Below are positions 12,242 to 37,279 of a DNA stretch of 64,000 nucleotides, piece by piece. The notes below the pieces were generated by a model. That model was not told the DNA's origin. It ran no database searches and was given only the letters and a program-made list of their open reading frames with translations. Source of the DNA: Octopus sinensis. Taxonomy: Eukaryota. Every line of letters begins with the position of its first letter. Within the stretch, counting starts at the first letter, position 1. Made by a program: the position numbers and the translations under genes. The stretch is from contig NC_042998.1 of NCBI RefSeq assembly GCF_006345805.1, positions 207,080,001-207,144,000 of the forward strand. The letters run 5' to 3'.

Positions 12242-12278
<37 letters not shown>

Positions 12279-13505: not shown

Positions 13506-13538
<33 letters not shown>

Positions 13539-16162: not shown

Positions 16163-16235
16163 TATATACATACATACATACATATATATATATAGAACAA
16201 ATGGTGAGGGATTATCAATCTGGGGGAAATACTTC

Positions 16236-16461: not shown

Positions 16462-17077
16462 GATCTCTGTTTGCCCACCAGGCTAACAATATTGTTTGGA
16501 TTAGTGAAGAACTTAAAATATTCCTAAGGCCAGGTCTGAGGTTACGGTTCATCATTAAGGTTAGTCATCATCATCATCATCATCGTCATTCAATGTCCAT
16601 TTTCCATGCTGACATGAACTCGATGGTCTGACAGGAGCTGCACTGGGCTCCAATTGTCCGTCTTGGCATGGTTTCTCCAGCTGGATGCTCTTCGTAATGC
16701 CGACCACCTTACAGAGTGGACTGGTCAGTGATGCAATAAATTAGCTTTGACTGGTCACACAAGTAACAAGACAGCAATAGTGATCTGTGCATCATCATCA
16801 TCATCATTTGATGTCCTCCTTCCAAGCTGGCAAAGGTTGAATGGTTTGCATATGCATGAGAACCAGGAGTGACTAATCAAACAAAAGCAACAGCTAAAGA
16901 GACTCTCTTGTTGACCATTTCAATAGCAAATGGCAGTGACCTCAATGTCACGGCTGATGGCCTTTAATGGAGATGTTGAATAACAACCTCAGAGGTTATC
17001 CAAGGACAATAGGAAACTATGGTTGAGAAACATGAAATTAAGAGTGTCCAAAGATCTTGGAGTTCTGTGATGCAAAT

Positions 17078-17354
17078 CAGTGGTTTCCAAAGTGGGCAGT
17101 ACTGCCCCCCCCCATTGGGGACAGTGGAAAGATCCAGAGAGACACTGAAGAAATGTGAGGTGATAATGGGGTGGCCAAAATGGGGTGATAGATGTAAAAA
17201 AAATATAATTATCAAGAGGTTAATTAGGTTTAAGTTTTATTTGTGAAATAAAGTTGTTTTGAATTTGCTGCCGAAAGTGGTTTATATTTGTGGTGGGGAG
17301 GGCGAGGGGTGGGGGCCAAGTGGGTGGCAGCCTGAAAATGTTTGAGAATTACTG
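17078..17354. mobile_element. hAT (Charlie-like) MITE, degenerate
   Basis: Ends cagtggtttccaaa / tttgagaattactg resemble CAGTGGTTCCCAA-type TIRs; no clear 8-bp TSD. Confidence 0.45.
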
Positions 17355-18158
17355 AGCCGGTCACCTGACCAGCTCATGTAAACATACAAGCCCGGAAGAC
17401 TTGATACTCAATGGTAAACAAGATAGACAGATACAAAATGTCATAACTTTGAGTGTTGGCTCTAAATTCTATAGAAAAATCTGTAGAGATAAAACTTTAA
17501 ATGAAAGCAACACACTCATCATCATCATCATCGGTTAACGTCTGCTTTCCATGCTGGCATGGGTTGGACGGTTTGACTGAGGACTGGCAAGTCAGAAGGC
17601 TGCACCAGGCTCCAATCTTGACCTGGCAGAGTTTCTACAGCTGGATGCCCTTCCTAATGCCAACCACTCTGAGAGTGTAGTGGGTGCTGTTTTCGTGCCA
17701 CTGGCACAGGTGCCAGTCAGGCGGCACTGGCATTGGCCATACTCAAATGGTGCTATTTACATGCCACTAGCACTGGTGCCAGTCAGGCAGCACTTGAATC
17801 GGTCATGCTTGAATGGTGCTTTTTATGTGCCAGCAGATTGGGGGAAAAGCACCATTTGAATGTGGCCGATGCCAGTGCTGCCTGACTGGCACCCATTGCA
17901 AAAAGGTAAGACACATTATTGACTTTTAAACCTTTTGATATACTTGGTAGCATGTTATTGGTTGCAACGCAAAATATGGTGTCCATACCAGTAATTAATA
18001 GGACAGATAGTTGTGACTAATATGTTTTCCCTCAGTGAATAACAATCCCCTCAACAAAGATTAATGATCAGGGATGTCAGAGCAGGAGACTGACAGAGCC
18101 AGGCAAGCAACACAATGTGAAGAAGAAAGGTAAAAATGTTGACAGTCCTTAACTAGAC

Positions 18159-18391
18159 TTAACCCTTTCATTACCAACCTGGCTGAAACCAGCTCTGGCT
18201 CTGTAGTACAAATGTCTTGTTTTCAAAAGTTCTGAATTAAAATCTTCCACCAAACCTTAGTCACAATTTATGTTCCTAACACTAGCTTAATGATAATAAC
18301 TAAGTTATTTTACTAAATTCTTTGTTATATTTAAAATTAATTGAAAGAAACATAAAGCATCTCAACAGAAATATGGTAACGAAAGGGTTAA
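18159..18391. mobile_element. piggyBac-type MITE
   Basis: TIRs ttaaccctttcattacc / ggtaacgaaagggttaa. Confidence 0.9.
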
Positions 18392-18414
18392 AATATATAA
18401 TAGAGAAACAATTC

Positions 18415-18641
18415 TTAACCCTTTCGATATCAACCTGGCTGAAACCTGTTCTGGCTCTGAGTACAAATGTCTTGTTTTCATAAGTTTTGAATTAAAATCT
18501 TCCACCAAACCTTAATCACAATTTATGTTCCTAACACGAGCTTAATGATAATGAAGTTATTTTACTAAATTCTTTGTTATATTTAAAATTAATTGAAAGA
18601 AACAGAGCATCTGAACAGAAATATTGTAACGAAAGGGTTAA
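18415..18641. mobile_element. piggyBac-type MITE
   Basis: TIRs ttaaccctttcgatat / gtaacgaaagggttaa; starts 23 bp after the previous copy. Confidence 0.9.
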
Positions 18642-19105
18642 GTTCAAAGGATTAACAGTTGACATATATGCCATGAAAGGTAAGAAGACAAGGAAAAAGG
18701 GGGCAATTGGGAGTTTTCACAAAACAATCTGCTGTGCAAGAGACAATGATACAATTTTGGGGATTGTTTAAATGATGGAATCCCCTCTGATGAGACTCCA
18801 ATGAAGGATGTCTACTGCATAGGTTTATATGTATGCGCATTATTTTGTCACAGTGGTCCGTTACTCTGGAGTTTCCTTGATGTGTGGTTGGTTCCTTGCA
18901 TAGAGGAAGAACAGACAAGGAGTGAACACACAACTCTCTGCTGACGGAGGAGGCTGGCGGACATAAAACTGTATAAACCTACAAGCTGGCTTTCCACTGT
19001 GATTGGTTGAAGAAAAACTAAGATTGGAATGTTTTTACCCATTGCTTACTGTTCGAATAACCAGCAGCACATTGAGGAAAGGTCTCGCTAAATAAAACAT
19101 GATTT

Positions 19106-19541
19106 TACAGTTCTATATTAAAGAGATGAGGAATTATGTACATTATTTACGTTATTACATTTGATAGATATTTGTCCTCATCTTGTTTGTTGTTAACACG
19201 TTTCGGCTGATATACTCTCCAGCCTTCATCAGGTGTCTTGGGGAAGTTCCGAGCCTGGGTTCTCATTCCTAAGGTATTTTTTGAGGTTATTCTTTTTTCT
19301 TTTTTTTTTTTATTTATTCTTTTTACTTGTTTCAGTCATTTTGACTGCGGCCATGCTGGAGCACCGCCTTTAATCGAGCAACTCGACCCCGGGACTTATT
19401 CTTTGTAAGCCCAGTACTTAGTCTATTGGTCTCTTTTCTCGAACCGCTAAGCGATGGGGACATAAACACACCAGCATCGGTTGTCAAGCAATGCTAGGGG
19501 TACAAACACAGACACACAAACATATATATATATATATATAT

Positions 19542-19582
<41 letters not shown>

Positions 19583-20067
19583 TATGACGGGCTTCTTTCA
19601 GTTTCTCTCTACCAATCCACTCACAAGGCTTTGGTCGGCCCGAGGCTATAGTAGAAGACACTTGCCCAAGGTGCCATGCAGTGGGACTGAACCCGGAACC
19701 ATGTGGTTGGTAAACAAGCTACTTACCACACAGCCACTCCTGCGCCTTATTATTATTATTATTAAGGTGGCGAGCTTGGCAGAAACATTAGCACGCCGGG
19801 CGAAATGCTTAGCGGATTTCGTTTATCTTTACATTCTGAGTTCAAATTCCGCTGAGATCATCTTGGCCTTTCATCCTTTTGGAGTCGATAAATAAAGTAC
19901 CAGTTGCATACTGGGTCGATCTAATCGACTCACCCCATCCCCCCAAAATTTTGGGTCTAGTGCCCTAGGGTAGAAAAGATTATTATTATTATTATCATTA
20001 TTGAGGTCACTCGGAATCTTGGGGTTAGTAGCCCGTGCTCTTAACCACTACGCCATATGCCTGTGGG
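19106..20067 (-). mobile_element. tRNA-HHR SINE copy split by two nested SINEs
   Basis: Tail at 19106-19290 and head at 20003-20067; the intervening 19319-19746 and 19765-19979 belong to other SINE families and sit in the (AAT)n linker. Confidence 0.7.
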
Positions 20068-20534
20068 CATCTTATCTTATTACTTATCTCAGTCTCATGC
20101 CCTGCTTGACAACCAGTGTTGGTGTGGTTACGTCCTAAAACAAAGTACTGGGGTTGATTTATTTGACTAAAAATTCTTTGAGATGGTGCTTCAGCATGGC
20201 ATGGCTGCAATCTATTGGAGACACACACAAACACATGCGATGGGCTTCTCTCAGTTTTCCTCTAAACGCTCTCATAAGAGTTTACCAAAGCCTAAGGTTA
20301 TAGTAAAAGACACTTGCTCAGGGTCCCATGTAGAGGTACTGAACATAAAATCTGGAGTACTAAGTTATGTCCATGTTCTTTCTCTTATATATATATATAA
20401 CATACTAATAAATATCTGTAAATATAAAACCATCCTGATTTCTGAGTACCTCTTTTCTTCTAATATCTATCTATCTATATATACATATATATATATGTGT
20501 GTGGGGGGGGGTGTAGAAGGTTGAAAAGGAACAC

Positions 20535-22094
20535 ATGAGTTGATGTATATATGGGAAAAAATGTCAAGGTAGAAAATGCTAAAATAATTTTATAAAAAAC
20601 ATTTCAGTACCGGTTTCGGTCATTGAGACTTTTTCAACTGTAAGTATGGAAAACAATTGAATTTTAGAAAAATTAAATGAAAAGTTTTTTTAAAAGAATA
20701 TTTGCATAGTGTTTGAATACAAGAAGCATTTTCCTTGTTTCTGCCTGTCTCTGTATCTCTTGTTTACTCTTGTGGGTTCAAGGTTGTTGTGAATTCTTGG
20801 CAGGGAAGAAGAAAGAGAAGGAGAAGAAGAAGAAGGAGGAGAAGAAGAAGGAGGAGGAGGAGAAGAAGAATGTGTGAGTGCCATGATAGTAGTAGAATGT
20901 TAAATGTTCAAGTGCCCTGAAAGTGACTTGTGGATGGTAGTAGCGATTGAATTCTTGAGATATCTCTTTTGAATGTATTGTTTATAATATTTGCATAGTT
21001 GTTATTCTAAACAACAATAGTGGTTAGGAAGGCGGTGGCGGAGAGGAAGAAGACGAAGAAGAAGCAGGAGAAAGACAAGGGAAAATAAGAAAGGAATGTA
21101 GGTGGTATGATAGTAGTAGGATGTTAAATGGTCAAGTGACGTAAAAGTGGTTTGTTGTGGATTATAGCAGTGATTGGGACTTTTGGTTGTTATGAATTCT
21201 TGTGTACCTCTTGAATGCATCATTTTAAATTTTTGTGTGTGTGTTTATGTTATTCTAAGACTGTGGTGGATATGTCTGTTGTAGATGCGTTCAAAAGGGG
21301 TCTTTATTTTGTAATAAAGAGAGTATCTTTACTAATTCGTTGGCTCAAGGTTGTATCGTCCCTGAATTGGTAGAGAGGAAAAATTCTGAAGCTTGGATTT
21401 TTGTTATTGGCGCAAATTTTGATGTGTTGGCTGAATGCTATTTTGCTGTTTTGGGGAATTTTGATCTGGGATCTGTGTAGAGCCATTCTTTTACGTAGGC
21501 TGTTTTTTGTTTGGCCTATGTATTGCTCATGACACCCAGAAAAGGTTGTGCGTGTATCAGGTTCTCTGAAGCACATGTGAAGCTGTTTTTCCCTGTGAAA
21601 CATTGTCCCTGTTTGAAGGAGAACTCTGATCCCTCAATTAAAATGCAGAAGAGCCACAGTTGGGTCTTCTGCATTTTTTTACTGATGGCTTCTGTGTTGT
21701 TATTGAGTATATTCAAGCTTGTATTAGGAGACTTTTCAGAGTTTTGAGTTGTCTCTTGTTTTTTATGATGGTGTGTGTTTGGTGGGTTAAGTTCATTCTG
21801 TGGTCCTTTTTTAGCAGGGGATGTTTTGGGGATGGTGTCGAAGGCTACATTGTTGAGAGAGTTGTGTGTGGAGATGTATGGTAAGGCTTTTGGTTGTAAA
21901 TCTTTCTTTAATTTGGGATGTCTGAGTTCATGGATGTTGAAAGCATATGTCAATTAGTGAAGGTGGGTAGTTCCTGGTGATGAGTGTATCTTTAAGTTCA
22001 TGTAGTTGTGTGTCTCTGCTATTTGCATTAGAAACTATAGTAGATATCCTTTTTGCTAGGTTGAAGGGGATATTCATTCTGGTGTGTCTGGGGT

Positions 22095-22095
<1 letters not shown>
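20535..22095 (-). mobile_element. Penelope-like element relic (RT C-terminus, GIY-YIG endonuclease, pLTR)
   Basis: HTRMNIPFNLAKRISTIVSN...LHELKDTLITRNYPPSLID and CHEQYIGQTKNSLRKRMALHRSQI...FSQHI, frameshifted; pLTR-like segment with a hammerhead-like motif downstream. Confidence 0.85.
20605..20640 (-). ncRNA. Hammerhead-like motif with a U3-A8 core in the Penelope pLTR
   Basis: CAG TTGAAAA A GTC TCAAT GAC C GAA ACCGGT A CTG; degenerate copies at 31515-31551 and 31770-31806. Confidence 0.55.
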
Positions 22096-22142
<47 letters not shown>

Positions 22143-22266
22143 TAATAATGATGATATGACAACAAAAGAATGAATGAGACCTCGATATTATGAAAAATAG
22201 AGGAATTTATCTATAAATACAATATGTGACAATTAGATGGTTGTCATAATAAAACTCAGTTTCTCT

Positions 22267-22329
22267 TAATAACTGATGAGATGCTGGAGCAGACTTCAGT
22301 CCCAGCATCCAAAACTCTGAGTTTTATTA
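22267..22329 (+). ncRNA. Hammerhead motif family D, G12 apparently mutated to A
   Basis: TAATAA CTGATGA GATGCTGG-loop-CCAGCATC C AAA ACTCTGAGT T TTATTA. Confidence 0.6.
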
Positions 22330-22886
22330 TGACAACCAACTAATTGTCACATATTATATATATATATTTGGTTTTTAGCTTTGGTTTGCAAGATTCTACA
22401 TGTGAGTTTGTATGTTGAAGCATATTCTGTTGTGTCTGGGGAGAGCAGTTCTCTTTTAGTGCCTTATAATTTAACACACTTTTCAATAGTTTTTTTAATA
22501 GTCGTTGACTATTGAAAAGTGTGTTAGATAATAAGGCACTAAAAGGTTGCAAGACACAATGAAAATTTTAGGAAAAATAAAGAAATGAATGAGTGGAAAC
22601 TTTACCAGTGAGTGTGTCAAATAATAAGACACTAAAAGAGAATGACTCTCCCCAGACACAACAATAAACAAATATATATATATATATCATCATCATCGTT
22701 TAACATCTGTTTTCCATGCTAGCATGGGTTGGATGGTTCGACCGGGGTCTGGGAAACCAGAAGGCTGCACCAGGCCCAGTCTGATTTGGCAGTGTTTCTA
22801 CAGCTGGATGCCCTTCCTAACGCCAACCACTCCGTCAGTGTAGTGGGTGCTTTTTACGTGCCAGACGAGGCTGGCAAATATATACA

Positions 22887-23203
22887 TATATAAATAAAAA
22901 GGGGCAGGCAACAGGTTGCTTAGCCACATACCGAAAAAAGACTGTTTATTTCTATTTTCTACAAATAAGTTACGTTGATAAGGATATGAATTTATGATTC
23001 TAATCCAGAAACACGTCCGTAAATAACCCCAGACTTTGTTTTCATTATTTTTTCCTTCTGTTTTACATATGTGAATTACATGGATATGTTATATGTGGAG
23101 TCTTATTTGTAGAAAATAGAAATAAACAGTCTTTGACTGCTATTTCTAATTTTTTCGGTATGTGGCTAAGCAACCTGTTGCCTGCTCCCTTTTTATTTAT
23201 ATA
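22887..23203. repeat. Imperfect fold-back (arms about 22887-22970 and 23102-23203)
   Basis: The arms match except for an 18-nt insertion in the right arm; related sequence at 50625-50720. Confidence 0.8.
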
Positions 23204-23359
23204 CAAATATATATATAGAATGTTTTTTTAAAAAAGTTCCTACCGATAATGGTTATATTTACATACTGAAATCTACCCAAAAATAATTGTTGGGTTTTTT
23301 TAAAACTATTAATTATTTACCCTTATATTATTAATAATGAAATATATATATATATGTAT

Positions 23360-23560
23360 ATATTGTTATATTTCGGAATGGTCATTTTGCCAGTTTAGCC
23401 AATAAAAACACACGCACTATATATTTGGTGTTACTTTGCTTCAGTGTTATTTATTTTTTACATTAATCTTAATCTTATTTCGGCCATATATATCCTTATA
23501 TAGTGCGTGTGTTTTTATTGGCTAAACTGGCAAAATGACCATTCCGAAATATAACAATAT
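23360..23560. repeat. Perfect 64-bp inverted repeat with a 73-bp spacer
   Basis: 23360-23423 is the exact reverse complement of 23497-23560. Confidence 0.95.
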
Positions 23561-25299
23561 CTGTTTCAACATACAACTTCACATAAAAAAATCTTGCACA
23601 ACAAATATATATAGATATATATATATATATATATATATATCATCATCATCATCATCATCATCGTTTAACGTCCGTTTTCCGCTCTAGCATGGGTTGGACG
23701 GTTCGACCGGGGTCTGGGAAGCCAGGGGCTGCACCAGGCTCCAGTCTGATCTGGCAGTGTTTCTACAGCTGGATGCCCTTCCTAACGCCAACCACTCCGC
23801 GAGTGTAGTGGGTGCTTCTTACGTGCCACCTGCACAGGTGCCAGGGGGGTCTGGCATCGGCCACGATCGGTTGGTGCTTTTAACGTGCCACCGGCACGGA
23901 GAGATATATATGAGAAAAGAACATGGGCATGACATAGATACAGATAATCTGTGTGACAATCCAGATACAGATAATCTGTCTGTACAAGCAGCAGTTGGAG
24001 TTTAAAGCGATTAACATTAAAGCTGGAACCCATGTGGTTTGTCATGCGCATCCAATCATGCCTATATGTATGTATGTATGTATGTATGTTTATTATTGTG
24101 TCTAGACATGCTCATATATATTTCTTTATTGCCCACAAGGGGCTAAACATAGAGGAGACAAACAAGGACAGACAAACGGATTAAATCAATTACATCGACC
24201 CCAGTGCGTAACTGGTACTTTATTTATTGACCCCGAAAGGATGAAAGGCAAAGTCGACCTCGGTGGAATTTGAACTCAGAACGTAACGACAGATGAAATA
24301 CCATATTTAAATGATAAACTTCTGGAAAGTTTTACAGATTTTTACAGTTCCATTGATAGTCTTTGAATCAGCTTTCTCCTTTCTGGTTTTGAGAAGTCTA
24401 ATTTCTCAAGACTGGTATTTAGGCAATGTGGTACATATCCCAGGGCCCCAATAATTACAGGTATAATGCATGTGTATACACATCTTTCTCTCTCTCTCTC
24501 TCTACACACACACACTGCTTCACCATTTCTCTTTTATAAGGCTGAAATGAAAAGTATCCTCCAAACACCAGACATCGTCATTATTAAAACCACCAGCAGC
24601 ACTAGATCCTATACCACTATCATGAACCATCTTCAAGAACCCTAACAACAACCAGCTTCCACCATCACCACATCTACTCCAACCACTACCACCATCCCTC
24701 CTACTATCCTCATCCATACCAACTCTTCCTTTCCCTCTGTAGGACCACCACTTTTACCACCACCCACACTGCTGCCACCACCTGCAAGAACTCTACCGTC
24801 ACAAAAGCCTAATTTCACTTTAATGACAATCTACCCTACTATCGCCAATACCGCCACCACTACCACCACCACCACTCTTGTTGACCACTTTCTACTACAG
24901 CCACTACAACCACCACCATTACCTATTTCTTTACTACCCACAAGGGGCTAAACACAGAGAGGACAAACAAGGACAGACACACGGATTAAGTCGATTATAT
25001 CGACCCCACAGCGTAACTGGTACTTAATTTATTGAACCCGAGAGGATGAAAAGCAAAGTCGACCTCGGCAAAATTTGAACTCAGAATGTAACGGCAGACG
25101 AAATACTGCAAAGCATTTCGCCTGGTGTGCTAACGGTTCTGCCAGCTCGATGCCTTTCCATCACCATTACCATCACAAGAGACATGACCAGCTTGTACTT
25201 TTGTACAGGATGGCCATGGCTGGAACGTTTGTGTTTATGGTGGTCTTGTTTGATCAAAGGTGACTTGGAGTTAAACAATTGTTAACCACACACCACTAC

Positions 25300-26550
25300 T
25301 GCCACTATCACCAATACTAATTTCATGACCACCACCACCATTACCACCACTGATCCCTCCAATATACCTCTTGCCCTACCCACTACACTGCTAGCAGCGT
25401 TATCCACCCCACCATGACCACCACAACAAACACAACTTCAATCATCACCCTCACTACTACAGCCAACACACTACAGCCAACACACTACAGCCATCACTGC
25501 CGATGCTACAAACAACAGAAACACCTTCGGTGCCAGCACCACCACCACCACCACCAACACCACCACCTTCTGTAGTAACCCCACCAATTAGCCCACCATC
25601 CTCTCCCCTACCACCACCACAATCAATTTCTCTCTTCTCCTCCGCTACCATCAACCACCACAGCCACCACCACCACCACCACTACCACCATCAACACCTT
25701 CAGTAGTAACCCCTATCAATTAGTCTCCCATCCTCTCCCTGCCACTACCACCACCACCATCAACACCTTCAATAATAACCCCCACCAATTAGCCCACCAT
25801 CCTCTCTCCATTACCACAATCAATTTCTCTCCCCTCCTCCGCTACCATCCTCTCCCCGCCACCACCACCACCACTACCACCACCATCATCATCAACACCT
25901 TCAGTGGTAACCCCTACCAATTAGCCCACCATCCACTCCTCTACCACCACCACAATCAATTCTCACCTCCTCCGCTACCATCCCCACACCATCACCCCCA
26001 CCACCAAACTCCCCACCAGTGGTAACACCCTCTCCATTTCATTTACCCGCCCCTCCCCGCTACCCTCCACCCCCCCACCAACACCACCACCACCAACACG
26101 ACATCACCACCTTCAGTGGTAACCCCTACAATTAGCCTACCATCCTCTCCCTGACACCACCACCACCCCACCACCCCACCACCTACCACCACCACCACCA
26201 CCACCACACCACCACCACCCCACACCACCACCACCACCACCACCTACACCACCACCACCACCACCACCACCACCACAATCACCACCACCACACCACCACC
26301 ACCACTACTACACCACCACCACCCCACCATACTACCACCACCACCCATCACCACCACCACCACCACCACCACTATACCACCACCACCACCACCATTACCA
26401 CCACCTTCTGTAGTAACCCCTACCAATTAGCCTACCATCCTCTCCCTGACACCACCACCACCACCACCACCACCACCACCACCACCACCACCACCACCAC
26501 CACCACCACCACCACCACCACCACTACTACCACCACCACCACCATTACCA
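25300..26550. repeat. (CAC)n low-complexity tract with an embedded ~45-bp minisatellite unit
   Basis: cttcagtrgtaacccc(c/t)accaattagcc(c/t)accatcctctcc recurs 6 times. Confidence 0.85.
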
Positions 26551-26556
26551 CAACCA

Positions 26557-26779
26557 TGAGGTCAACATTACCAATGTGTGATGTAAATAGTACATGACAT
26601 CACAGGCCTCATCTCAGCCGCATAATAATGTGAAGGGGAGTGAGAGAGAGGAGAGAGCGAGGAGCGGTGAGAGTTGTTTACTTGGACTGACTGGGCTGCG
26701 GCTAAGAATAGATATTACCGCTACAATAACAACAACAAGAACAACGACGTTTACTGCCAGAATCTCCTGCGTTACATCA
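26557..26779. promoter_or_regulatory. Candidate enhancer or promoter island with clustered bZIP and FoxO motifs
   Basis: TGAGGTCA 26557, TGATGTAA 26579, TGACATCA 26595, TTGTTTAC 26674 and TTACATCA 26772, in a unique island between low-complexity tracts. Confidence 0.35.
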
Positions 26780-26829
26780 CTTGATTTTCTGTGTCTAGCT
26801 TCCTTGTAGAACAAAGGAAAGATAGGTGA

Positions 26830-26835
26830 GTGTGC

Positions 26836-26877
<42 letters not shown>

Positions 26878-27337
26878 AAAAAGATTGATGTGTGTGTGAG
26901 TGTATATATGTATATATATATACACACACATACATATATACATACACATAAAAATATATATATATACATACATACATTCATATATACATACATTATACAT
27001 ACATACATATATATATACATACATACATATATACATATATATATATACATACATATACACACATATATATATATATACATACATATACATGTACATACAT
27101 ATATACATACATACATTATACATACATACATATATACATACATACATCATCATCATCACATATATATATATACATACATATACACATATATATATACATA
27201 CATATACATGTATATACATACATGTACATACATACATATATACATATATACATACATACATACATACATACATATACATTCATATATACATACATATATA
27301 TATAATTAGATAGAAAGATAGCTAGATGCATAGATAG

Positions 27338-27380
<43 letters not shown>
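26830..27380. repeat. Compound (TA)/(CA)/(TACA) microsatellite; similar tracts at 35545-35780, 38240-38430, 50105-50625, 59600-60060, 60550-60800, 62930-63540
   Basis: Direct inspection; these tracts are the source of the long YI/HT/VC pseudo-ORFs. Confidence 0.95.
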
Positions 27381-28076
27381 TGTATACGTTTAAGACAGAG
27401 CGAGAGAAAGTGAGAGGAAGCAGTGAATTGGAAAGATAAGAGGAAATTATATAAAGAAGGTGGTGGAGTGGTGGTGGGTAGCAGAACAGAAAGTTAGAAT
27501 TAGAGAGAGACAGAGTGAAATAAATATGAAAAGGTAGACAGATAGATAGAGAGAGAGGGAGAGAGAGAGAGGGGAGAAGGTGGGTGAGTTAGAGGATACT
27601 TGACTTTTAAGGTTAAGAGTACAAAGAGGGAGATCATTGTCTAGTGTATGCATGAGAGATTTACATAGGCGTGTGTGTGTGTGTGTGTATGTAGATCTGT
27701 GAATATATATATTATATGTATGCATATATTATATATAAATTTTGAGCTCTGTGGTTAAGAATCTTGCTTCCCAACCCTGTGTCCTTGGGTTCAGTCACAC
27801 CGCGGTACCTTGGGACAAGTGTCTTTTACTATAGCCCCATGTTGACCAAAGTCTTGTAAGCAAATTTGGTAGACATGTATGTGTGTGTGTGTGTGTGCTT
27901 TGACCTTTGTTTTGACATCATGTGATGGCTGTGTTGTAAGAAGTTTGCTTCCAACCACATGGTTCTGGGTTCAGTCCCACAGTGTGATACCTTGGGCAGG
28001 TACCTTCTACTATGGCCGAGGGCTGACCAAAACCTTATGAGTGGATTTGTTTGATAGAAACTGAAAGAAGCCTGTC

Positions 28077-28111
<35 letters not shown>

Positions 28112-31100
28112 CATGTCTGTGTTTATTCCCCACCACTTCTTGACAACCGGTGCTGATGGGTTTACGTCCTTGTGACTTAGTAGTTTGGCAAAAGAGACTG
28201 ATAGAATAAGTACTATGCTTAAAAAAAGTACAGGGGTTGATTCATTTGAACTAAAAATTCTTCAAGGGAGTGCCCCAGCATGGCCGCAGTCTAATGATTG
28301 AAACATGTGAAAAATAAAAGATACGAGTGATATCGTTTGTTTCCACTGTTTCATGAAGAAATATTACCTTGCGAGGAAAACAGGCGAAGGTTGGCAGTAG
28401 GAAGGGCATCTGGCTGTAGAAATTCTGCCACAATAATTCCATCTAACATGGGAAAGTGGATATTAAATGATGATGATGATGATGATGATGATATTGCATT
28501 TTATTAGAGGTCGAAGCTTCTTAAATCAGAACTCTTAACATTGTTCAGTGTTTAAACAATTAAGAGTATGGAAGCAGTGTGACACACTGTCAGCAAAAAT
28601 ATTCGCAAATACATCAAAATATGATCCGGCAGCAGTGCATCAAGATTTGATTGATTGCCAAACAGAAACAAAAAAACAACAGCAACTCATGTTAGAGAAT
28701 GCGTCACACATTCACCTCTTCAATCTTCATGCACTGAACACATGATATTTTTATACATTTACATGCAAAACACGTGATGCCATAATGCCTGTAGTACCGT
28801 ACGGACATACACACGTGTGTGTGCTTGTGTGTGTGTTTGTGTAAATCGTTATTAATCCAAACAAGTGGAGGAAGAGAAATGAAGTTAAAAATGCACAGAC
28901 AATATACCAGAATTAATCAGAATTTAATTATTCTTTAAAATACAGGAACACACTCGACCAGTTTCATATTAGATTTTCAAAAGTGTATAGGATATGGAGA
29001 TGTGCCACAGATTATATTTATTAGTGCGTAGGCGTACGCATGGTAATACTGAGCAAGTGAATTAAGCAAGGAAGGTAGTCATTGTTAATAAAATTTTAGT
29101 ATTGATAAATAGACATTTAATGTTAATTATGGCCATATTTCATGATGTGGCAAATCCGTTATTTATGAAACAAACTATTATACCCATCTGGTAGTTGGAG
29201 ATTCTTTGATAAATTGCAATGAAAGCATCTTTAAGAATTTACCAATTCCAGTTTTTTTTTTGTTTTAAAATTGTAAAAGGATAGAACAGAATGCTACTTC
29301 TGTGAGTGACAAAATTCAGACATTCTATATAATTTATGTCAGGGACATATTTTGTGTAATAGGTCAAATGCTGATTTTTATCATCTTTTAAATTCCAGAT
29401 ATATTTGGAGAGTGAAGTGGTGAAGCACCTGTCAGAGTGGCTGAATGTTTTTTATTTGTTTTTTTTCTTTCTCGCTGCTTATCAAAATGAGAGGGATAGC
29501 ACTCATGATTTGTTATATTTCCAGGGCTTCTAAGGCTACTGAGAGAAATAGATGAGGTGACAACTTCCTGGGAACCTGGTTCAAATGCTTGCAACAAAGT
29601 TAAATAGAATTAAATGCACACAGGGATCAGCTTATAATGTTCGGCCAGACAATGTCTGTCACCCCAAACCCCAGAAAGCAAGGCTTCAAGACTGACATTC
29701 TAACATTTCTGTCAATTCACTGCCCTAGACTTGTGCTTTAATTTATTGTCTTTGAAACAATGATAAGCAAAGTTAATCTCAATGGGATTTGATCTCAGTG
29801 TGCTGATAGTCAGAAACCTATCAAAAGTTTTACACTCTAATGATTCTGTCAATTTGCTTTAATGTATATGAATATTGTTAGAATCTTATTTAAAAGTATT
29901 TTTAGTTAGTAGCTCTATATAGCTTTTTGTTTCATTGATATTTGGTCAGCCTAGATCAATAAACTAATGTTTTAGAAAGGCACAATTCTCAAGGAAGTAG
30001 ATATTAGTGTGGATTCAATTATATAGCATAGTAGAATTTTGTGTGTTCATAGTGGAACGGTTTCTTCTGTTTATCCTGGTTATGGAAGCAACAAGAGTTT
30101 TGGTGCAGTTGTAGCTTACCTTAAGACTACCTTGTTAAATATCTTATGTTATTTATGGTTTTTGAGGAAATACATATTAATAAGTTTGAGAAAAATTTAA
30201 GCAACATTTAAACTAGCGGGTGGATTTTACCATCCAATATTTCATTTTCTACTTCTGTGGTTATGAATATTAGTGTTGTACTTTATGTAAGGCAGCCTCT
30301 CTTTGAAGCCACTGTCATTTAATGTGACATTGCAGTTATTCAATTAGACAAGTTGAATAAGGTGACACTTGAAATCCAAAACACTCTACATATCTAAATA
30401 TATATCACAATTTAATAAATGCACCTTTTACTCTTTCATTCATTTGTTCCAGCTTATGGTCTGTGGCCATATTGGAGCAGCACAGTTATTGTTGCTACTC
30501 TTTCTATATAACCTGACTTATTTGGTTGGATTTTGATGACCATGGAAATCTGGTACTTTTGCCCTCATTTCGTCGTAGCTTTTGTCACAAAAGAGATTCA
30601 ACAAGAATCTCAAGTGTTTGTTGAACATATTTACAACAGCATATTGAAACAGCTGTAGGCTTTTGAACCCTTAGCAATTAGACTATCTGGCCCTAACTCT
30701 AGATAGAGATGATGGGATATTTGGCACTATCTGGTTGCAGTCACAGACCATAGATACCGTAAGACCTTTAATAGAAGTAGAAGTACAGTTACAGCATCAT
30801 AACACCCACTTCCCACAGACCATATAATATATACATCATCATCATCATCATTGTCATTTTGACATTCACTTTTCCATGCTTCTAGGATGGGATGCCCTTC
30901 CTGTTGCCAACCATCCCCTGTCTCCAAGCAAGGTAAGTATTTTCCCATGCACAGACATGTTCTCACAGAACATTGGAAATGAATGACACTGCTTGTATGA
31001 CAGGGATACTCGTTTACAACTACCAAGCAATGTCAAGACAAGGACACACACACACACACACACATGCATGTGTGCACAGGAAGTGCACTATTCCTAAATA

Positions 31101-31419
31101 AACACGATAAACTAATAAGAAATTTGAAAAGATTTTTAATAAGATTAAATGTGAACAGAGACATGTCTTCAAGATATTCTGTCCATGTGACACTGTATAT
31201 TATACATATGCATGTGTGTGTGTGTGTGTCTGTGTGCAGGTGTATGCTGATAATACTGAGGAAGAGTGTGAAGCAAATTACGTAACAGGCCAATTTGCAT
31301 GCGTAATACCAAGGACAGTGAGAGATAAAGAGAGAGAGAGAGAGAGAGAGAGAAAGATAGGGGTGGGAGTCATAGAGTGAATGCTGTGAGAGCATCCTAG
31401 CCAGCAACAACAACAACAG

Positions 31420-31454
<35 letters not shown>

Positions 31455-31462
<8 letters not shown>

Positions 31463-31679
31463 AAAAAAAAAAGTCAAGGTAGAAAATGCTAAAATAATTT
31501 TATAAAAAACATTTCAGTACCGGCTTCGGTCATTGAGACTTTTATCAACTCTAAGTATGGAAAACAATTAAATTTTGGAAAAATTAAAAGCAAAGTATTT
31601 TAAAAGAATATTTGCATACTGTTCAAATACAAGGGGTGTTTTCCTTGTTTTTGCCTGTCTCTGTGTCTCTTGTTTACTC

Positions 31680-31717
<38 letters not shown>

Positions 31718-31940
31718 AAAAAAAAAAGTCAAGGTAGAAAATGCTAAAATAATTTTATAAAAAACATTTCAGTACCGGCTTCGGTCATTGAGACTTTTAT
31801 CAACTCTAAGTATGGAAAACAATTAAATTTTGGAAAAATTAAAAGCAAAGTATTTTAAAAGAATATTTGCATACTGTTCAAATACAAGGGGTGTTTTCCT
31901 TGTTTTTGCCTGTCTCTGTGTCTCTTGTTTACTCATATAC
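31455..31940 (-). repeat. Two tandem ~255-bp copies of the Penelope pLTR segment also found at 20535-20770
   Basis: The two copies appear identical, are flanked by (TA)n and are similar to 20545-20770. Confidence 0.85.
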
Positions 31941-34567
31941 ATATATATATATATATAGTAGTGGTAAGTGGGACCACACCTGAGGGGCAGTGGAAATGGT
32001 GATGGAAAGATTGATGAATGTCAAAGGAAGAGTGACCAGAGGGAGAGGGAATGACAGTAGGCAACGCAGGAGGATAATGGTTGGGGGTGGTGGTCAGCAG
32101 TTAGTAAAACCACTTTATCCAACTATCCAGATGCAGAAGGACAAAGGAGGTTGGTGGGGCAGGGGTGGATTGAATATAGCAAAATCCGAATGTTTGCTTC
32201 TGATTTGACAGGCAGTAAAGTACAGTGAATGGGAAGATGAGGGAGAAGATATTGGATGAGGGAGAGAGAGAGGTGATGTAGCATGGATAAGGGCCCACTG
32301 TATATCACCCATTAATATGGCCCTTCATCATCCCTTTTGTAAAATGTAGCATCTTTTCATCAGTCTTTGCTACCCTGCTCTGAGTCTTCCTCTGTCTCTC
32401 TCTCTTATCCACAGACATCATTCACTTTAAGTGCCAACCATTTCCTTAAGCTGCCATAATCCTCCTTACCCATCATATTGCCCCATATACCTGTTTCTTT
32501 ACTACCCACAAGGGGCTAAATATAAAGAGGACAAACAAGGACAGACGAATGGATTAAGTCGATTATATCGACCCCAGTGTGTAACTGGTACTTATTTAAT
32601 CGACCCCGAAAGGATGAAAGGCAACGTCGACCTTGGTGGAATTTGAACTCAGAACGTAACGGCAGACGAAATACCGCTCAGCATTTCGCCCGGCGTGCTA
32701 ACGTTTCTGCTAGCTCGCCGCCTTATACCTGTTCAAGAACAGTCTCCTGTCTTGTACACTATTCAAATTCTCTCTTATATCTCAGCTCATTTCTACTTCT
32801 GCATCATTACACACCATCATTCCACATTCAGCAGGTCCTGCTTGCTTCATTCACTCTCTTCCAAAATCCAACATCACACACAAACAACATTCAAACTGCC
32901 CTTGACTTTGAGAGAGAGAAGCTGTTCTTCATTGCCAACAATGGTCTGGGCTCCTTGAAAATTTTTCCAATCCCTTTTTACTCTCTGTCACCAGACTTAT
33001 TGAACACCTTACCCCAGATCCCATTACAAATTAGATCATTTGGGAAACAAAAGCTATCATTTATTTCTCTGGAGACATCTAGCCATTTGAGTGAATCTCT
33101 CAAATATTCTTAAAGCCTATTTCCGCCTCTGTAGCTGATGTGTATAAAACCTATTTTCTCTTTTAGTCCACTTGTGTCTGCCCCCGCCCCTCCACTGCAC
33201 CTTTTTTACCCACTGTATACATGAGGTACTTTTTTGCAAATTTTTACCAATTCCTTTTCTGCAAACAAAATTCAACCATTTCTCTGATGGTAGCAGGATC
33301 TTATCTCCCTGCTTACAAAGACTTTTACTTTTAGGCCCTTAAAATCCAGGTTTTGCTTCCATGTCAGGAATTGTTTCAGTTCTTCAGAAGAACTACGTCC
33401 TCATTATACTAGAGTACTTAAGGACTCAAATGGTCTTAAATGATGCTGCTTTCAGAGGTATGATGAATAAAAGAGGTCTGCAAACAAAGTTCTGACAGAC
33501 TCATACTTGCAAGCTGAATTTGTTGCTAAAATCATTGCCGACTGCCCTTCTGTACATGGTTTCTAAAGCCCTCACAGACCTATTTCTTTGCTACCCACAA
33601 GGGGCTAAACACAGAGAGGACAAACAAGGACAGACACACGGATTAAGTCGATTATATCAACCCCAGTGCGTAACTGGTAGTTATTTAATCGACCCCGAAA
33701 GGATGAAAGGCAAAGTTGACCTCAGCGGAATTTGAACTCAGAACGTAGAGACAGATGAAATACCGCTACATTTCGTCCAGCGTGCTAACGTTTCTGCCAG
33801 CTCGCAGCCATAAAATCCTCACAGACCATTCATCTCTCCCTAGTTTCCAAAGTGACAACCAAATCCCAGAGTGAAAGGATGCCAAAAGGTGCCTCCAAAT
33901 CACCGGAATCTAGGTACCAAACTTACACCTATCTAAGTACCTCTCTTGTAGTTGTCTCATTAACAAAGTGATATTAGCCGTACCTCTTATTGGCACAAAG
34001 TCAAACTTCATCTGAATCCAGGAAAACCCTGTTTCCAATTAATTTCTGGCAAAACCTCTTCTCGTTCCTTCCATGACATTCACCAACTGTTTCACACCTC
34101 AGAGTCACTTTGCTTTCTCACTTTTTCGCATTTGTTCTTCACCTGCGAGTCTTTTTTTTTCTTTTTTCATCTTTTACTCGTTTCTGTCATTAGACTGTGG
34201 TCAGGCTGGAGCACTGCTTTGAATCATTTTAGTTGAATGTATTGGCCCAAGTACTTATGTTTTTTGAAACCTGGTACTTATTCTATCAGTCTTTTCTGCC
34301 AAACTGCTAAGTTATGGTGATATAAATACACCAACATTGGCTGTCAAGCAGTGGTAGGGGACAAACTTACACACAGACACACACACATACACACACACAT
34401 ACACATAAAAACACGATGGGCTTCTTTCAGTTTCCATCTACCAAATCCACTCATAAGTCTTTGGTTGGCCCAAGGCCAAGATACTTGTCCAACGTGACAT
34501 GCAGTAGGATTGAACCTGAGACCATATGGCTAGGAAACAAACTGCTAAATATACAGGCACACTTAAA

Positions 34568-34621
<54 letters not shown>

Positions 34622-35718
34622 ATTTTCATTTAAAATATATGACCGTAATCATATTCTTTTCTACCCTAGACACAAGGCCTGAAATTTTTTGGGAGGGGGC
34701 CAGTCAATTAGATCGACCCCAGTACACAACTGGTACTTAATTTATCGACCCTGAAAGGATGAAAGGCAAAGTCAACCTTGGTGGAATTTGAACTCAGAAC
34801 GCCAAGCATTTCGCCTGGCGTGCTAACATTTCTGCCTGCTCACAGAAATCCTATTACACAGTGTTATCAAGGCGTAGCTTTATATTTATAAGTATGTAAA
34901 AGTACACACATTTTTATTTATATCTAATGATATATACATCTTGATACACACACACACACACACATACACACCACACATATGTGTGTTTGTGTAAATTTTC
35001 TGAATGTCAGAATTACCAAGAAAATACAATTGTCTGAATCTGTAAAATAAACCAGGTAAAGAGAAAAATTCTGACATTCATAAACACGAGCGTGTTTATT
35101 TTTGTTTATATCTGTACCGATGACAGCTTCTTTGCAGGACATAAATATACGGTGTTATTTATGAATTTAATTAGCAGAAATTCAATTAAGAAAGAAATCC
35201 GATGGGCTGAAATCTAATAAAGACAAAAGAAAAAAAAGGAAAAAAGAAATCCAATAACATTGGAAGAAAAACCATTTGTTAAGAAATGAAGAAGCACAGA
35301 AACTAAATTCTTAAAATAGTTTGAGAAATTCAATTGAGAGGAGGCGGAGTTTAGCAAAATGTATGAATGGAGACAGTTTACTACTTGTGACTTCAGGTAG
35401 CAGAAGGACACAGAGGACACACGGACACACACACACACACACACATGTATATATAAATAACATTATGAATGACTTTTATAGAACAGGTTCGAATGTATGG
35501 TGGTGGTGGTGGTGGTAGTGGTGACGAGGAAGTTAATGTATATCAGACACACACACATACAGAGATACATATACCCACACATGTATACATATATATGTAT
35601 ACACACATATATATATATACACACACACACACACATATATATACACACACATACATATATATACACATATACACACATATATACACACACACACATATAT
35701 ATATATACACACACACAC

Positions 35719-35774
<56 letters not shown>

Positions 35775-36271
35775 GATGATGATGATATATATAAACACAC
35801 ATCCTGCTTTGTAAAGAAGGGCAACAACAATGCGGTGACATTCATGGGTTTTCCCAAAGGTATCAGTAGCTGGGGTAGGGGTGGGGGTGGGGAGTAAGCC
35901 CCCCCCCCAGGGACACTGTGTCTTTTCTGTTGTTATTATTAGAAAACTTAAGATACATACAAAAGAAGTAAAAGGTAAAATGGGATGTTGTGGCAATCAT
36001 CACTTCATCTATCAATAGTATATGTAGGGAGACAGACAGATAAATACACATATATATATATATGTATATATGTATATATATATATATACACACACGTGTG
36101 TATATATTTATTCACACACACACACATATATATATATAAACACACACACACACAGGTATATGTGTATATCTGGGTGTATACACACATGTATGTATATCTG
36201 TCTTTCTATCTATATATCAAGTTTCATTTATATTAATGTTTTTGTTTATGTTCAGTACAAATTTATAATTC

Positions 36272-36362
36272 GACAGTGACTTCGAAGTATCGGCCGGCTA
36301 AGCCATCATCAGACTGGCAGACTGACGACCGCTTAGCTGACCAAAACTTTGAAGTCACTGTC
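36272..36362. ncRNA. Back-to-back pair of hammerhead motifs (family E)
   Basis: Minus: GCCAGT CTGATGA T GGC TTAGCCG GCC GAT ACTTCGAAGT C ACTGTC (A14U). Plus: GGCAGA CTGACGA CCGC TTAGCTG ACC AAA ACTTTGAAGT C ACTGTC (degenerate). Confidence 0.7.
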
Positions 36363-36614
36363 AACAACATTCCTGTATAAGAATTTAAAAATAACCCATT
36401 TTTTTTCTTCATATATACATATATATAGATAGAAACACACACTCATATATAATCATATAGACAAATACACCAATACACACAGACATACATATATATATAC
36501 TCACACACACACACACTCATACATAAGTGGAGTTGATAATAATTACAGAACCAAAGAAATTATCCAAGAATTTAGTTTCTTTTCTTTTGGAATTGCATAA
36601 AGAACACATTTTAC

Positions 36615-36653
36615 CTTGCTGCAAGCAGGTGCGTCGTAGGTGGTGCAGGGCAT
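36615..36653 (-). CDS. Candidate coding part of an alternative first exon, MPCTTYDAPACSK (phase 0), probably RCAN
   Basis: ATG at 36653 follows a 5' UTR of about 420 nt with only one upstream ATG (3-codon uORF at 37007-37018). Donor AAG|GTAAAA. A competing donor AG|GTACTT lies just upstream of the ATG. No homology support. Confidence 0.4.
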
Positions 36654-37043
36654 GATGAAAGTACCTTCTTGTACTGTTTGAAACGGCTAAGATCTTGGAA
36701 CGACTCCCTTTCTCTTGGTTTTTACTTATTTTTGTTGTTGTTGTTGGGATCCCTTTTTTTCTTCCCCTTTTTCTTCTTATATCCGTCTTCCGTTAATTCC
36801 TTATACTTTGGTTTATCAATTTCTACACAGAGGCACCGCTGAGAAAACGGGTTCCACAGAGGCAGAGAGAGAGACAGAGTTGTAGGAGAGAGGTTATAGA
36901 TAAAGGTAGAGTATACTCTAGAGGAAGAGAGTGTGGGGCTAAGTCCACCTTGGTTAGGGAGTGAGTTGGATGAGGTTGGCTAAAGAGAGGATGTGTACCA
37001 AAGTACTCAGAGCAACATAAAGAATCTCGACAGAGATCTGCTA

Positions 37044-37106
37044 GGTCTCTCCTCCAAGAGTGTCGGCTGGTGACTGAGCTGCTGCTCTCTCACTGCTAGG
37101 CTTATA
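37044..37106 (-). promoter_or_regulatory. Pol II core promoter: TATA, Inr and DPE
   Basis: TATAAG begins at -31 (37106); Inr TCAGTC has A+1 at 37075; G at +24; AGACC (RGWYV) at exactly +28 to +32 (37048-37044). Confidence 0.7.
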
Positions 37107-37279
37107 TCACACATAAGATTGAACAAACGGTAAAGGTGAGACGTGTGTGTGGAGGAAGAGAGGGAGGTGGTGGAAGGAGAAGGAGGAGAGGAGGAGGAGG
37201 AGACATCTTTATTCCATAAAAAAGTTACACAGAAATGTGAGGGTGTCGGTGGTGGAGATGTTATGAAGGTATAGGCAGA

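What the first reader, a model, noticed from the sequence alone, without database searches (positions are those of the whole stretch)
36615..37106. Internal TATA+Inr+DPE promoter predicting a short, RRM-less RCAN isoform
Seen: TATA at -31, TCAGTC Inr, G+24 and DPE at +28 to +32 all in canonical register; an ATG-poor 420-nt leader with one 3-codon uORF; a 13-codon ORF ending at a phase-0 donor that matches the phase-0 acceptor at 10192. Inference: splicing across 26.4 kb gives a ~113-aa protein (MPCTTYDAPACSK-PTKCLG...DRVN) that keeps the LxxP, SPPASPP, PxIxIT-like and TxxP motifs but lacks the RRM, i.e. a minimal inducible calcineurin inhibitor. I do not recall such an isoform being described, but I cannot search.
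Basis: partly seen in the sequence, partly recalled or inferred. Interest (0 to 1): 0.72.

Follow-up and report, generated by a model that had tools for sequence, protein, structure and literature searches.

The report
Octopus RCAN gene's internal alternative first exon
Inside a long intron of an octopus calcineurin-regulator (RCAN) gene lies a small, evolutionarily conserved alternative first exon that should give a 113-residue protein with only the calcineurin-binding half; it looks real, already exists as an uncharacterised database model, and is of moderate interest.

Summary
These are TATAAG at -31, TCAGTC with A+1 at 37075, G+24, AGACC at +28..+32, a 422-nt leader with one 3-codon uORF, and a 13-codon ORF ending at a phase-0 donor after 36615. 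The TATA+Inr+DPE combination occurs once in 128 kb, against 0.04 expected.

The predicted 113-aa product matches an existing UniProt model from Octopus bimaculoides (A0A0L8H116), with the same 13-residue N-terminus. In Argonauta hians the mini-ORF sits in the same intron. It keeps 12 of 13 residues, and 6 of 7 base changes fall at third codon positions. It is one of only four unique conserved blocks in more than 50 kb.

A TATA box and an Inr-like block are also shared, and the leader is ATG-depleted in both species. However, TATA-Inr spacing differs by 14 nt and the DPE is not conserved. The RRM exons lie outside the window.

No transcript data could be reached, so the TSS and the splice junction remain inferred. 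"Inducible" has no support: there is no NFAT-like site cluster. I read this as a real alternative first exon, a new variant of the RCAN family's usual alternative-TSS scheme.

The parts
37133..37141 (-). Upstream block TCTCACCTT, shared exactly with Argonauta just 5' of the TATA box
   Evidence: 9-mer exact match, collinear with the other promoter blocks
37101..37107 (-). TATA box (ATATAAG). The T of TATAAG at 37106 is -31 from the predicted +1
   Evidence: Read. The same heptamer is in Argonauta at L001:50975
37072..37077 (-). Initiator-like TCAGTC, with predicted +1 A at 37075
   Evidence: Argonauta has CCAGTCAGTT at L001:51015-51024. The TSS itself is not shown by any data
37060..37070 (-). 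Conserved downstream block CCAGCCGACAC (Argonauta: CCAACCTGACAC)
   Evidence: Promoter-block alignment scoring 59, above all 500 shuffles and all 1000 Argonauta intron pieces, and reached by 4 of 1000 Octopus intron pieces
37044..37048 (-). DPE-like AGACC at +28..+32, with G+24 at 37052
   Evidence: Fits RGWYV. Not in register in Argonauta, so it may be fortuitous
37007..37018 (-). 3-codon uORF, ATG TTG CTC TGA, the only ATG in the leader
36615..37075 (-). Predicted alternative first exon: 5' leader 37075-36654 and CDS 36653-36615 (MPCTTYDAPACSK)
   Evidence: The ORF is conserved in Argonauta (12/13 aa, 82% nt, 6 of 7 changes at third positions). The N-terminus matches O. bimaculoides model P0001. 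The leader is ATG-depleted in both species
36609..36614 (-). Splice donor GTAAAA after AAG, phase 0
   Evidence: Argonauta has AAG|GTAAAT
10193..36614 (-). 26.4-kb intron with no RRM exon and no other block conserved with Argonauta
   Evidence: tblastn with cephalopod RCANs finds nothing here. The filtered blastn gives no other significant unique collinear hit in this interval
10027..10192 (-). Common exon equivalent to vertebrate exon 6 (PTKCLG...LSPG), carrying LQPP and ISPPASPP
   Evidence: tblastn and blastn matches to cephalopod RCANs. Phase-0 acceptor, phase-1 end
4707..4843 (-). Last coding exon (GEAHELHPP...PGIVVH...TMCPDRVN, then stop)
   Evidence: Residues 55-91 of the product match the RCAN1 core peptide in PDB 6UUQ_B
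4060..4142 (-). Block conserved with Argonauta about 570 nt after the stop codon, presumably 3'UTR
   Evidence: 77% identity over 87 nt to L001:59785-59867

Best explanation
The window holds the 3' part of an octopus RCAN (calcipressin) gene on the minus strand. Inside the long intron that separates the RRM-coding exons (upstream, outside the window) from the two common 3' exons lies a genuine alternative first exon.

The proposed mechanism has four steps:
1. Transcription starts at an internal TATA-type promoter, at or near 37075.
2. An approximately 420-nt ATG-poor leader is scanned to the ATG at 36653.
3. Thirteen codons are translated, and the exon splices in phase 0 over 26.4 kb to the exon at 10192.
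4. The product is a 113-residue protein: a unique 13-residue N-terminus plus the intrinsically disordered calcineurin-binding half of RCAN ([22 protein letters not shown] core, TMCP), without the RRM.

By analogy with human RCAN1 residues 89-197, which bind and inhibit calcineurin on their own, this mini-RCAN should act as a calcineurin binder and inhibitor uncoupled from RRM-dependent functions.

Shown here: the exon, its coding constraint, phase compatibility, motif content and an existing matching gene model.

Inferred: the TSS position, the splice junction in this species, expression of the product and its inhibitory activity.
For: 1. Database model. O. bimaculoides UniProt model A0A0L8H116 (P0001, 113 aa) is MPCTTYDAPACSK followed by PTKCLG..., 96-97% identical to the window's product.

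2. Conservation of the mini-ORF. In the Argonauta hians RCAN locus the mini-ORF lies in the same intron, between the second RRM exon and the PTK exon. It reads MPCTTYDAPTCSK followed by AAG|GTAAAT. Of 7 base differences, 6 are at third codon positions and only one residue changes (binomial p about 0.007).

3. Rarity of conservation. The ORF is one of only four significant unique collinear blastn blocks between the two loci; the introns are otherwise unalignable.

4. ATG as start codon. Conservation begins exactly at the ATG. In-frame stops lie 12 and 9 codons upstream. A at -3, C at -1 and C at +4 are shared.

5. Promoter. A block with TCTCACCTT, ATATAAG, CAGTCA, CCAnCC(n)GACAC and CTAGCAG is shared. 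Its alignment score of 59 beats all 500 shuffles and all 1000 Argonauta intron pieces, and is reached by 4 of 1000 Octopus intron pieces.

6. Leader. It is ATG-depleted independently in both species: 1 ATG in 422 nt and 0 in 343 nt, each matched by about 1.5% of tiles.

7. Core-promoter composite. It is unique in 128 kb, with 0.04 expected.

8. Product. It hits Pfam Calcipressin at 74 bits over profile positions 82-185 and the RCAN1 peptide crystallised on calcineurin, 6UUQ_B. Human RCAN1 89-197 alone binds and inhibits calcineurin (PMC7458460).
Against: - No transcript, CAGE or junction evidence was reachable. Exact-sequence look-ups of both 113-aa proteins in public assemblies returned nothing, and no other database protein carries this N-terminus.
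- The O. bimaculoides annotation split the locus into two complementary models: P0121 covers Pfam positions 3-77 and P0001 covers 82-185. P0001 could therefore owe its existence partly to a gene-splitting artefact, and its supporting evidence cannot be inspected.
- TATA-Inr spacing is 14 nt longer in Argonauta, and the DPE is not conserved.
- A second TATAAG-like site lies at 36782, 129 nt before the ATG.
- The middle of the leader is not significantly conserved.
- TMCP lacks the arginine at i+2 that contributes much of TxxP-mediated inhibition in human RCAN1.
Confidence: 0.68

Rival explanations
1. The exon is real and coding, but transcription does not start at 37075. It could start at another site, for example about 30 nt downstream of the second TATAAG-like site at 36782, giving a leader of roughly 100 nt. 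Alternatively it could start at an unseen non-coding exon further upstream. The TATA+Inr+DPE register would then be partly fortuitous.
For: The 11-mer ATATAAGAAGA at 36782 is identical to the Argonauta TATA box sequence. The DPE and the TATA-Inr spacing are not conserved. Only the proximal ~120 nt of leader shows weak collinear similarity (0/1000 and 48/1000 controls), and the middle leader shows none.
Against: At the position collinear with 36782, Argonauta has GATAGAATTTG, which is not a TATA box. The ATG-free zone runs back about 365 nt from the start codon in Argonauta, and to the upstream TATA region in Octopus with only the uORF ATG inside it. The upstream TATA lies in a collinear conserved block.
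Confidence: 0.2
2. The exon is not a first exon. It is an internal or cassette exon of transcripts from the canonical upstream promoter, for instance a poison exon that truncates the protein after the RRM. The internal promoter would then be illusory.
For: No TSS data exist. O. bimaculoides has an RRM-only model with a foreign 29-residue tail (P0121), which shows that alternative 3' ends after the RRM exon are at least modelled.
Against: In-frame stops lie 12 and 9 codons upstream of the ATG, and no conserved acceptor or polypyrimidine tract precedes it. Peptide-level conservation starts exactly at the ATG with synonymous-biased changes, which a poison exon does not need. The P0121 tail is not encoded in this window. 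ATG depletion of more than 340 nt upstream fits a scanned leader.
Confidence: 0.08
3. There is no functional isoform. The mini-ORF is a chance ORF picked up by a gene finder when the long-intron RCAN locus was split, and the promoter motifs are chance.
For: The 2015 O. bimaculoides annotation did split the locus into two models. No transcript-derived protein with this N-terminus is in the 5.8-billion-cluster database.
Against: A chance ORF would not be one of four conserved blocks in more than 50 kb of otherwise unalignable intron. It would not keep 12 of 13 residues, the donor and the Kozak-like context in Argonauta, nor place 6 of 7 changes at third positions.
Confidence: 0.05

Closest known systems
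Vertebrate RCAN1-1 / RCAN1-4 alternative first exons (RCAN1-4 is the calcineurin-NFAT-inducible form)
   Same: The gene family is the same, and so is the strategy. An intronic alternative promoter drives a short coding first exon that is spliced to common 3' exons carrying the FLISPP and calcineurin-binding motifs. [quoted passage not shown]
   Different: Vertebrate first exons join exon 5, so all isoforms keep exons 5-7 and most of the RRM. The octopod exon sits one intron further 3' and joins the exon-6 equivalent, so the whole RRM is dropped. No NFAT-like GGAAA cluster lies upstream here. From my own knowledge, calcineurin-regulated NFATc factors are a vertebrate feature.
Human RCAN3-1,3,4,5 / 1a,3,4,5 / 1c,3,4,5 transcripts, predicted to give a 116-aa product
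   Same: These give a predicted N-terminally truncated RCAN of almost the same size. It lacks the N-terminal domain but keeps FLISPP and the CIC calcineurin-binding motif (PMC3178534).
   Different: The human form arises by skipping the first coding exon, which implies use of a downstream ATG. It does not come from a dedicated, conserved coding first exon with its own promoter, and there is no unique N-terminal peptide.
Recombinant human RCAN1 calcineurin-binding domain (residues 89-197; complex structure PDB 6UUQ)
   Same: The octopod product's 100 RCAN-derived residues correspond to this construct, which starts at about the same exon boundary. The construct is disordered, binds calcineurin tightly through LxVP, PxIxIT and TxxP motifs, and inhibits it (PMC7458460). 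Residues 55-91 align with 6UUQ_B.
   Different: The construct is a laboratory fragment, not a natural isoform. The octopus TxxP is TMCP, which lacks the Arg at i+2 that is important in human TRRP.
Mizuhopecten yessoensis calcipressin-2-like isoform X2 (P0039)
   Same: This is a mollusc RCAN with an alternative short N-terminus (MCENVPESLK) replacing exon 1. It shows that molluscs also use alternative 5' exons in this gene.
   Different: It joins the second RRM exon, so half of the RRM is kept, as in vertebrate RCAN1-4.

Membership tests
RCAN / calcipressin (Pfam PF04847) | Significant match to the Calcipressin profile | tested here: met
   74.1 bits against a cut-off of 23.5, E 1.6e-20, but only profile positions 82-185 of 186
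RCAN / calcipressin (Pfam PF04847) | FLISPP-type signature, the SPPxSPP phospho/pseudosubstrate motif | tested here: met
   [10 protein letters not shown] is encoded at the exon starting 10192. The motif definition comes from PMC3896409 and PMC7458460
RCAN / calcipressin (Pfam PF04847) | Core calcineurin-binding region (ELHA + PxIxIT-like, the CIC motif) | tested here: met
   INYDLL...ELHPPTENQPGIVVHICEE aligns to RCAN1 peptide 6UUQ_B, E 8e-8
RCAN / calcipressin (Pfam PF04847) | LxVP-like and TxxP motifs | tested here: inconclusive
   LQPP and TMCP are present at the expected positions. TMCP lacks the i+2 Arg shown to matter in human TRRP. Binding was not testable
RCAN / calcipressin (Pfam PF04847) | N-terminal RRM-like domain | tested here: not met
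   It is absent from this isoform by construction. The RRM exons are not in the window. They do exist in O. bimaculoides (P0121) and Argonauta (P0004)
RCAN1-4-type inducible alternative-first-exon isoform | Short coding first exon inside an intron, spliced in frame to common 3' exons | tested here: met
   The phase-0 donor at 36615 and phase-0 acceptor at 10192 are compatible. O. bimaculoides has the same model, and the exon is conserved in Argonauta. The junction itself was not observed in reads
RCAN1-4-type inducible alternative-first-exon isoform | Joins the exon-5 equivalent, so the RRM is largely retained | tested here: not met
   In Argonauta the exon lies downstream of the second RRM exon (L001 26550-26735 versus 51364-51402). 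P0001 joins it to the exon-6 equivalent
RCAN1-4-type inducible alternative-first-exon isoform | Cluster of NFAT sites upstream, giving calcineurin-dependent induction | tested here: not met
   GGAAA/TTTCC counts over -1000..+50 around the TSS are 1 (Octopus) and 3 (Argonauta), against a background of about 3 per kb
TATA + Inr + DPE core promoter | TATA at -31/-30, Inr TCAKTY, DPE RGWYV at +28..+32 | tested here: met
   All three are in register in the window. The combination is unique in 128 kb with 0.04 expected
TATA + Inr + DPE core promoter | The same architecture conserved in the orthologous promoter | tested here: inconclusive
   The TATA and Inr-like motifs are conserved. In Argonauta the spacing is 41-45 nt and there is no DPE in register
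TATA + Inr + DPE core promoter | Transcription actually initiates at the Inr A | not testable with these tools
   No CAGE, RACE or RNA-seq data are accessible

The most novel reading that the evidence does not exclude
Octopods, at least Octopus and Argonauta, have maintained a dedicated internal promoter and a 13-codon exon since their common ancestor. Together these produce a natural 'calcineurin-binding-domain-only' RCAN. This would separate calcineurin inhibition from the RRM-dependent roles of RCAN. The conserved Cys-containing N-terminal tag (MPCTTYDAPxCSK) might add a function of its own, such as lipid anchoring or targeting. No such dedicated RRM-less isoform turned up for any animal RCAN in the literature searches made here.
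Probability: 0.55. Interest if true: 0.5.

Novelty: new variant of a known kind. Interest (0 to 1): 0.4.

Why it matters
RCAN proteins are the main endogenous regulators of calcineurin, and the role of their N-terminal RRM is still poorly understood. A naturally selected isoform that consists only of the calcineurin-binding half would be a ready-made separation-of-function allele. Comparing where the long and short forms are expressed in octopus tissues could show what the RRM adds.

The case also shows that the family's habit of alternative promoters extends to molluscs and can move to a different intron.

On the practical side, it flags that the O. bimaculoides 2015 annotation splits this locus into two models. 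It also gives an example of finding real micro-exons in very long cephalopod introns from cross-species coding constraint alone.

Tried and rejected
- RRM exons in the window. A hidden RRM exon between the new exon and 10192 is therefore rejected.
- Transcript evidence. Exact-protein look-ups for both 113-aa sequences returned nothing. A degenerate DNA pattern for the mini-ORF found nothing in metagenome contigs. Two protein searches covering lengths 62-327 aa found no further protein with this N-terminus.
- RRM-less RCANs in other invertebrates. P0038 looked like one but is an ORF-calling artefact on a genomic contig with short introns, with a TTG 'start' just after an acceptor.
- A 39-nt perfect Octopus-Argonauta match at 22139-22101 is only a (TA)n microsatellite.
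- The MAFFT alignment of the whole exon region misaligned the promoters, so it was replaced by local alignment with controls.
- NFAT-type inducibility is rejected on site counts.
- The 2015 octopus genome paper could not be opened to check how the gene models were made.
- ORFs overlapping the region on both strands are low-complexity only.

Full report
**Observation**

The gene lies on the minus strand.

- TATAAG has its T at 37106, which is -31.
- TCAGTC spans 37077-37072, with A+1 at 37075.
- G at 37052 is +24, and AGACC at 37048-37044 is +28..+32.
- The leader is 422 nt long. Its only ATG opens a 3-codon uORF at 37018-37007.
- The main ATG is at 36653 with A at -3, and opens 13 codons (MPCTTYDAPACSK).
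- AAG|GTAAAA follows position 36615.

The downstream exons run 10192-10027 (phase-0 acceptor, phase-1 end) and 4843-4707 including the stop codon. Joined together they give 342 nt, or 113 aa.

The strict TATA+Inr+DPE combination occurs once on both strands of the window. Markov-1 simulations expect 0.04 per window, or 0.005 with G+24.

**What gene this is**

tblastn and Pfam identify the two 3' exons as the C-terminal half of an RCAN/calcipressin. The exon at 10192 corresponds to vertebrate exon 6, and the last exon corresponds to exon 7.

No RRM-coding exon is present anywhere in the window. I searched with squid, Argonauta and O. bimaculoides proteins. The RRM exons must therefore lie beyond position 64000, more than 27 kb upstream of the candidate promoter.

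**The isoform is already a database model**

The best database hit is UniProt A0A0L8H116 (P0001) from Octopus bimaculoides. It is an 'uncharacterized protein' of 113 aa whose sequence is MPCTTYDAPACSK followed by PTKCLG... It is 96-97% identical to the window's product.

The same annotation also holds a complementary model, A0A0L8GZK7 (P0121, 202 aa). It carries the N-terminus and the RRM up to ...KCYFAQ, followed by an unrelated 29-residue tail.

Pfam places P0121 on Calcipressin profile positions 3-77 and the short product on positions 82-185. The 2015 annotation therefore split one locus into two models.

It also means that P0001 alone is weak evidence for a real isoform, because it could be a by-product of the split.

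**Independent test by conservation**

Argonauta hians has a full-length RCAN (P0004, 281 aa), and its 69-kb locus could be fetched as L001. Its layout is as follows:

| Element | L001 coordinates |
|---|---|
| Exon 1 | 10001-10375 |
| Second RRM exon | about 26550-26735 |
| PTK exon | starts 57316 |
| Last exon | starts 59113 |

Between the second RRM exon and the PTK exon, at 51364-51402, lies ATG CCC TGC ACT ACT TAT GAT GCC CCT ACC TGC AGC AAG|GTAAAT. This reads MPCTTYDAPTCSK.

- Against the window there are 7 base differences. Six fall at third codon positions and only one residue changes. By my own binomial calculation, six or more of seven at third positions has p of about 0.007.
- In a repeat-filtered blastn of the whole window against L001, only four unique collinear blocks are significant: this mini-ORF (E 3e-7), the two common coding exons and one 3'UTR piece. 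Everything else aligns only as interspersed repeats.
- Conservation starts exactly at the ATG.
- In-frame stops lie 12 and 9 codons upstream of the ATG.
- A at -3, C at -1 and C at +4 are shared.

This is the signature of a translated exon whose ATG is the start codon. It is not the signature of a chance ORF or a cassette exon.

**Promoter and leader**

About 390-450 nt upstream of the ATG, both species carry an ordered set of blocks: TCTCACCTT, ATATAAG, CAGTCA (TCAGTC in Octopus, TCAGTT in Argonauta), CCAnCC(n)GACAC and CTAGCAG.

- A local alignment of this region scores 59. That is above all 500 shuffles and all 1000 Argonauta intron pieces. It is reached by 4 of 1000 Octopus intron pieces.
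- The leaders are ATG-depleted independently in both species. Octopus has 1 ATG in 422 nt, and Argonauta has 0 in 343 nt. Only about 1.3-1.5% of same-size tiles are as poor.

Both facts fit a scanned 5'UTR that begins near the TATA/Inr block.

The canonical register is not conserved, however. In Argonauta the TATA lies 41-45 nt from the Inr-like A, and no DPE is in register. The middle of the leader is not significantly similar between the species.

Octopus also has a second TATAAG-like site, ATATAAGAAGA at 36782. The collinear Argonauta position is not a TATA box.

I therefore regard 'an internal promoter here' as likely and 'TSS exactly at 37075 with a functional DPE' as possible but unproven.

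**Function**

The product keeps the following motifs:

- LQPP (LxVP-like)
- [10 protein letters not shown]
- the ELHP...PGIVVH core, which aligns to the RCAN1 peptide crystallised on calcineurin (6UUQ_B)
- TMCP (TxxP)

Li et al. (PMC7458460) showed that human RCAN1 residues 89-197 form a disordered domain that binds and inhibits calcineurin by itself, through these motifs. That fragment corresponds to the portion retained here. The short isoform most likely acts as a calcineurin binder and inhibitor without RRM functions.

One caveat applies. The i+2 Arg of TRRP, which is important in human RCAN1, is Cys here.

'Inducible' has no support. GGAAA/TTTCC sites are not enriched upstream, with 1 and 3 per kb against about 3 in the background. 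From my own knowledge, calcineurin-regulated NFATc is a vertebrate feature.

**Comparison with what is known**

In vertebrates all RCAN isoforms share exons 5-7, and variation comes from alternative TSS usage (PMC3896409; PMC7468584). A scallop RefSeq isoform (P0039) likewise swaps exon 1 but keeps the second RRM exon.

The octopod exon sits one intron further 3', so it removes the whole RRM.

The nearest precedent is the set of human RCAN3 transcripts that skip exon 2. They are predicted to give a 116-aa protein that retains the CIC motif (PMC3178534). That form arises by exon skipping, not from a dedicated conserved coding exon.

Literature searches for calcipressin plus octopus, and for an alternative-promoter RRM isoform of RCAN, found no description of this one.

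**Verdict**

This is a real, conserved alternative first coding exon of an octopod RCAN gene, at about 0.7 confidence. It predicts an RRM-less 113-aa isoform. The isoform is already present as an uncharacterised gene model but is undescribed in the papers that could be searched.

The exact TSS and DPE, the splice junction in this species and the protein's activity remain inferences. 'Inducible' is unsupported.

Overall this is a new variant of a known kind, of moderate interest.

Noticed in passing
window 6679-6794 (-): A full-length U6atac minor-spliceosomal snRNA gene (Rfam RF00619, 95 bits, E 6e-22, model positions 1-126). It ends in a T-run and sits in the last RCAN intron on the same strand as RCAN. 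No Rfam match at gathering score was found anywhere in the Argonauta locus L001.
   Followed up: partly
window 4060-4142 (-) = L001:59785-59867: A conserved block about 570 nt after the stop codon (77% over 87 nt). It includes ACAAGGCACAAC and CTGTAAATTAAAA, a Pumilio-like UGUAAAU core. It is a probable 3'UTR regulatory element shared by Octopus and Argonauta.
   Followed up: partly
window, many sites, e.g. 59457-59293, 54654-54497, 53556-53392, 9412-9258, 8917-8764, 7994-7840, 5356-5200, 1927-1765, 1081-928: A roughly 160-nt interspersed (SINE-like) repeat family is present in many copies, in both orientations, in the Octopus window and in the Argonauta locus (70-90% identity). It accounts for nearly all non-exonic blastn hits.
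   Followed up: no
window about 37200-39400: Directly upstream of the candidate promoter lie a CT-rich tract (37140-37200) and about 2 kb of low-complexity, microsatellite-like sequence. ORF translations there are runs of T, H, V, P and similar residues. This limits how far a proximal promoter can be traced.
   Followed up: no
P0121 (O. bimaculoides A0A0L8GZK7): The RRM-bearing model ends with a 29-residue tail (MNELEQREIKCLAQEHNTQPGPGFELTTS) after ...KCYFAQ. The tail is encoded neither in this window nor in the Argonauta locus. It is either an alternative 3' exon giving an RRM-only isoform or an annotation artefact.
   Followed up: partly
L002 (Logan contig SRR18067307_4732292): The apparent 112-aa 'short RCAN' P0038 is an ORF-calling artefact on unspliced genomic DNA of an unidentified invertebrate with short introns. 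The contig does show that the intron after ...YFSQ lies at the same position as in cephalopods.
   Followed up: yes
window 37018 and L001:50999: Both species have an ATG that opens a 3-codon ORF exactly 365 nt before the main ATG (MLL* in Octopus, MLY* in Argonauta). In Argonauta it lies between the TATA box and the Inr-like motif, so it would be outside the transcript under the promoter alignment used here. This is probably coincidence, but it is not resolved.
   Followed up: partly
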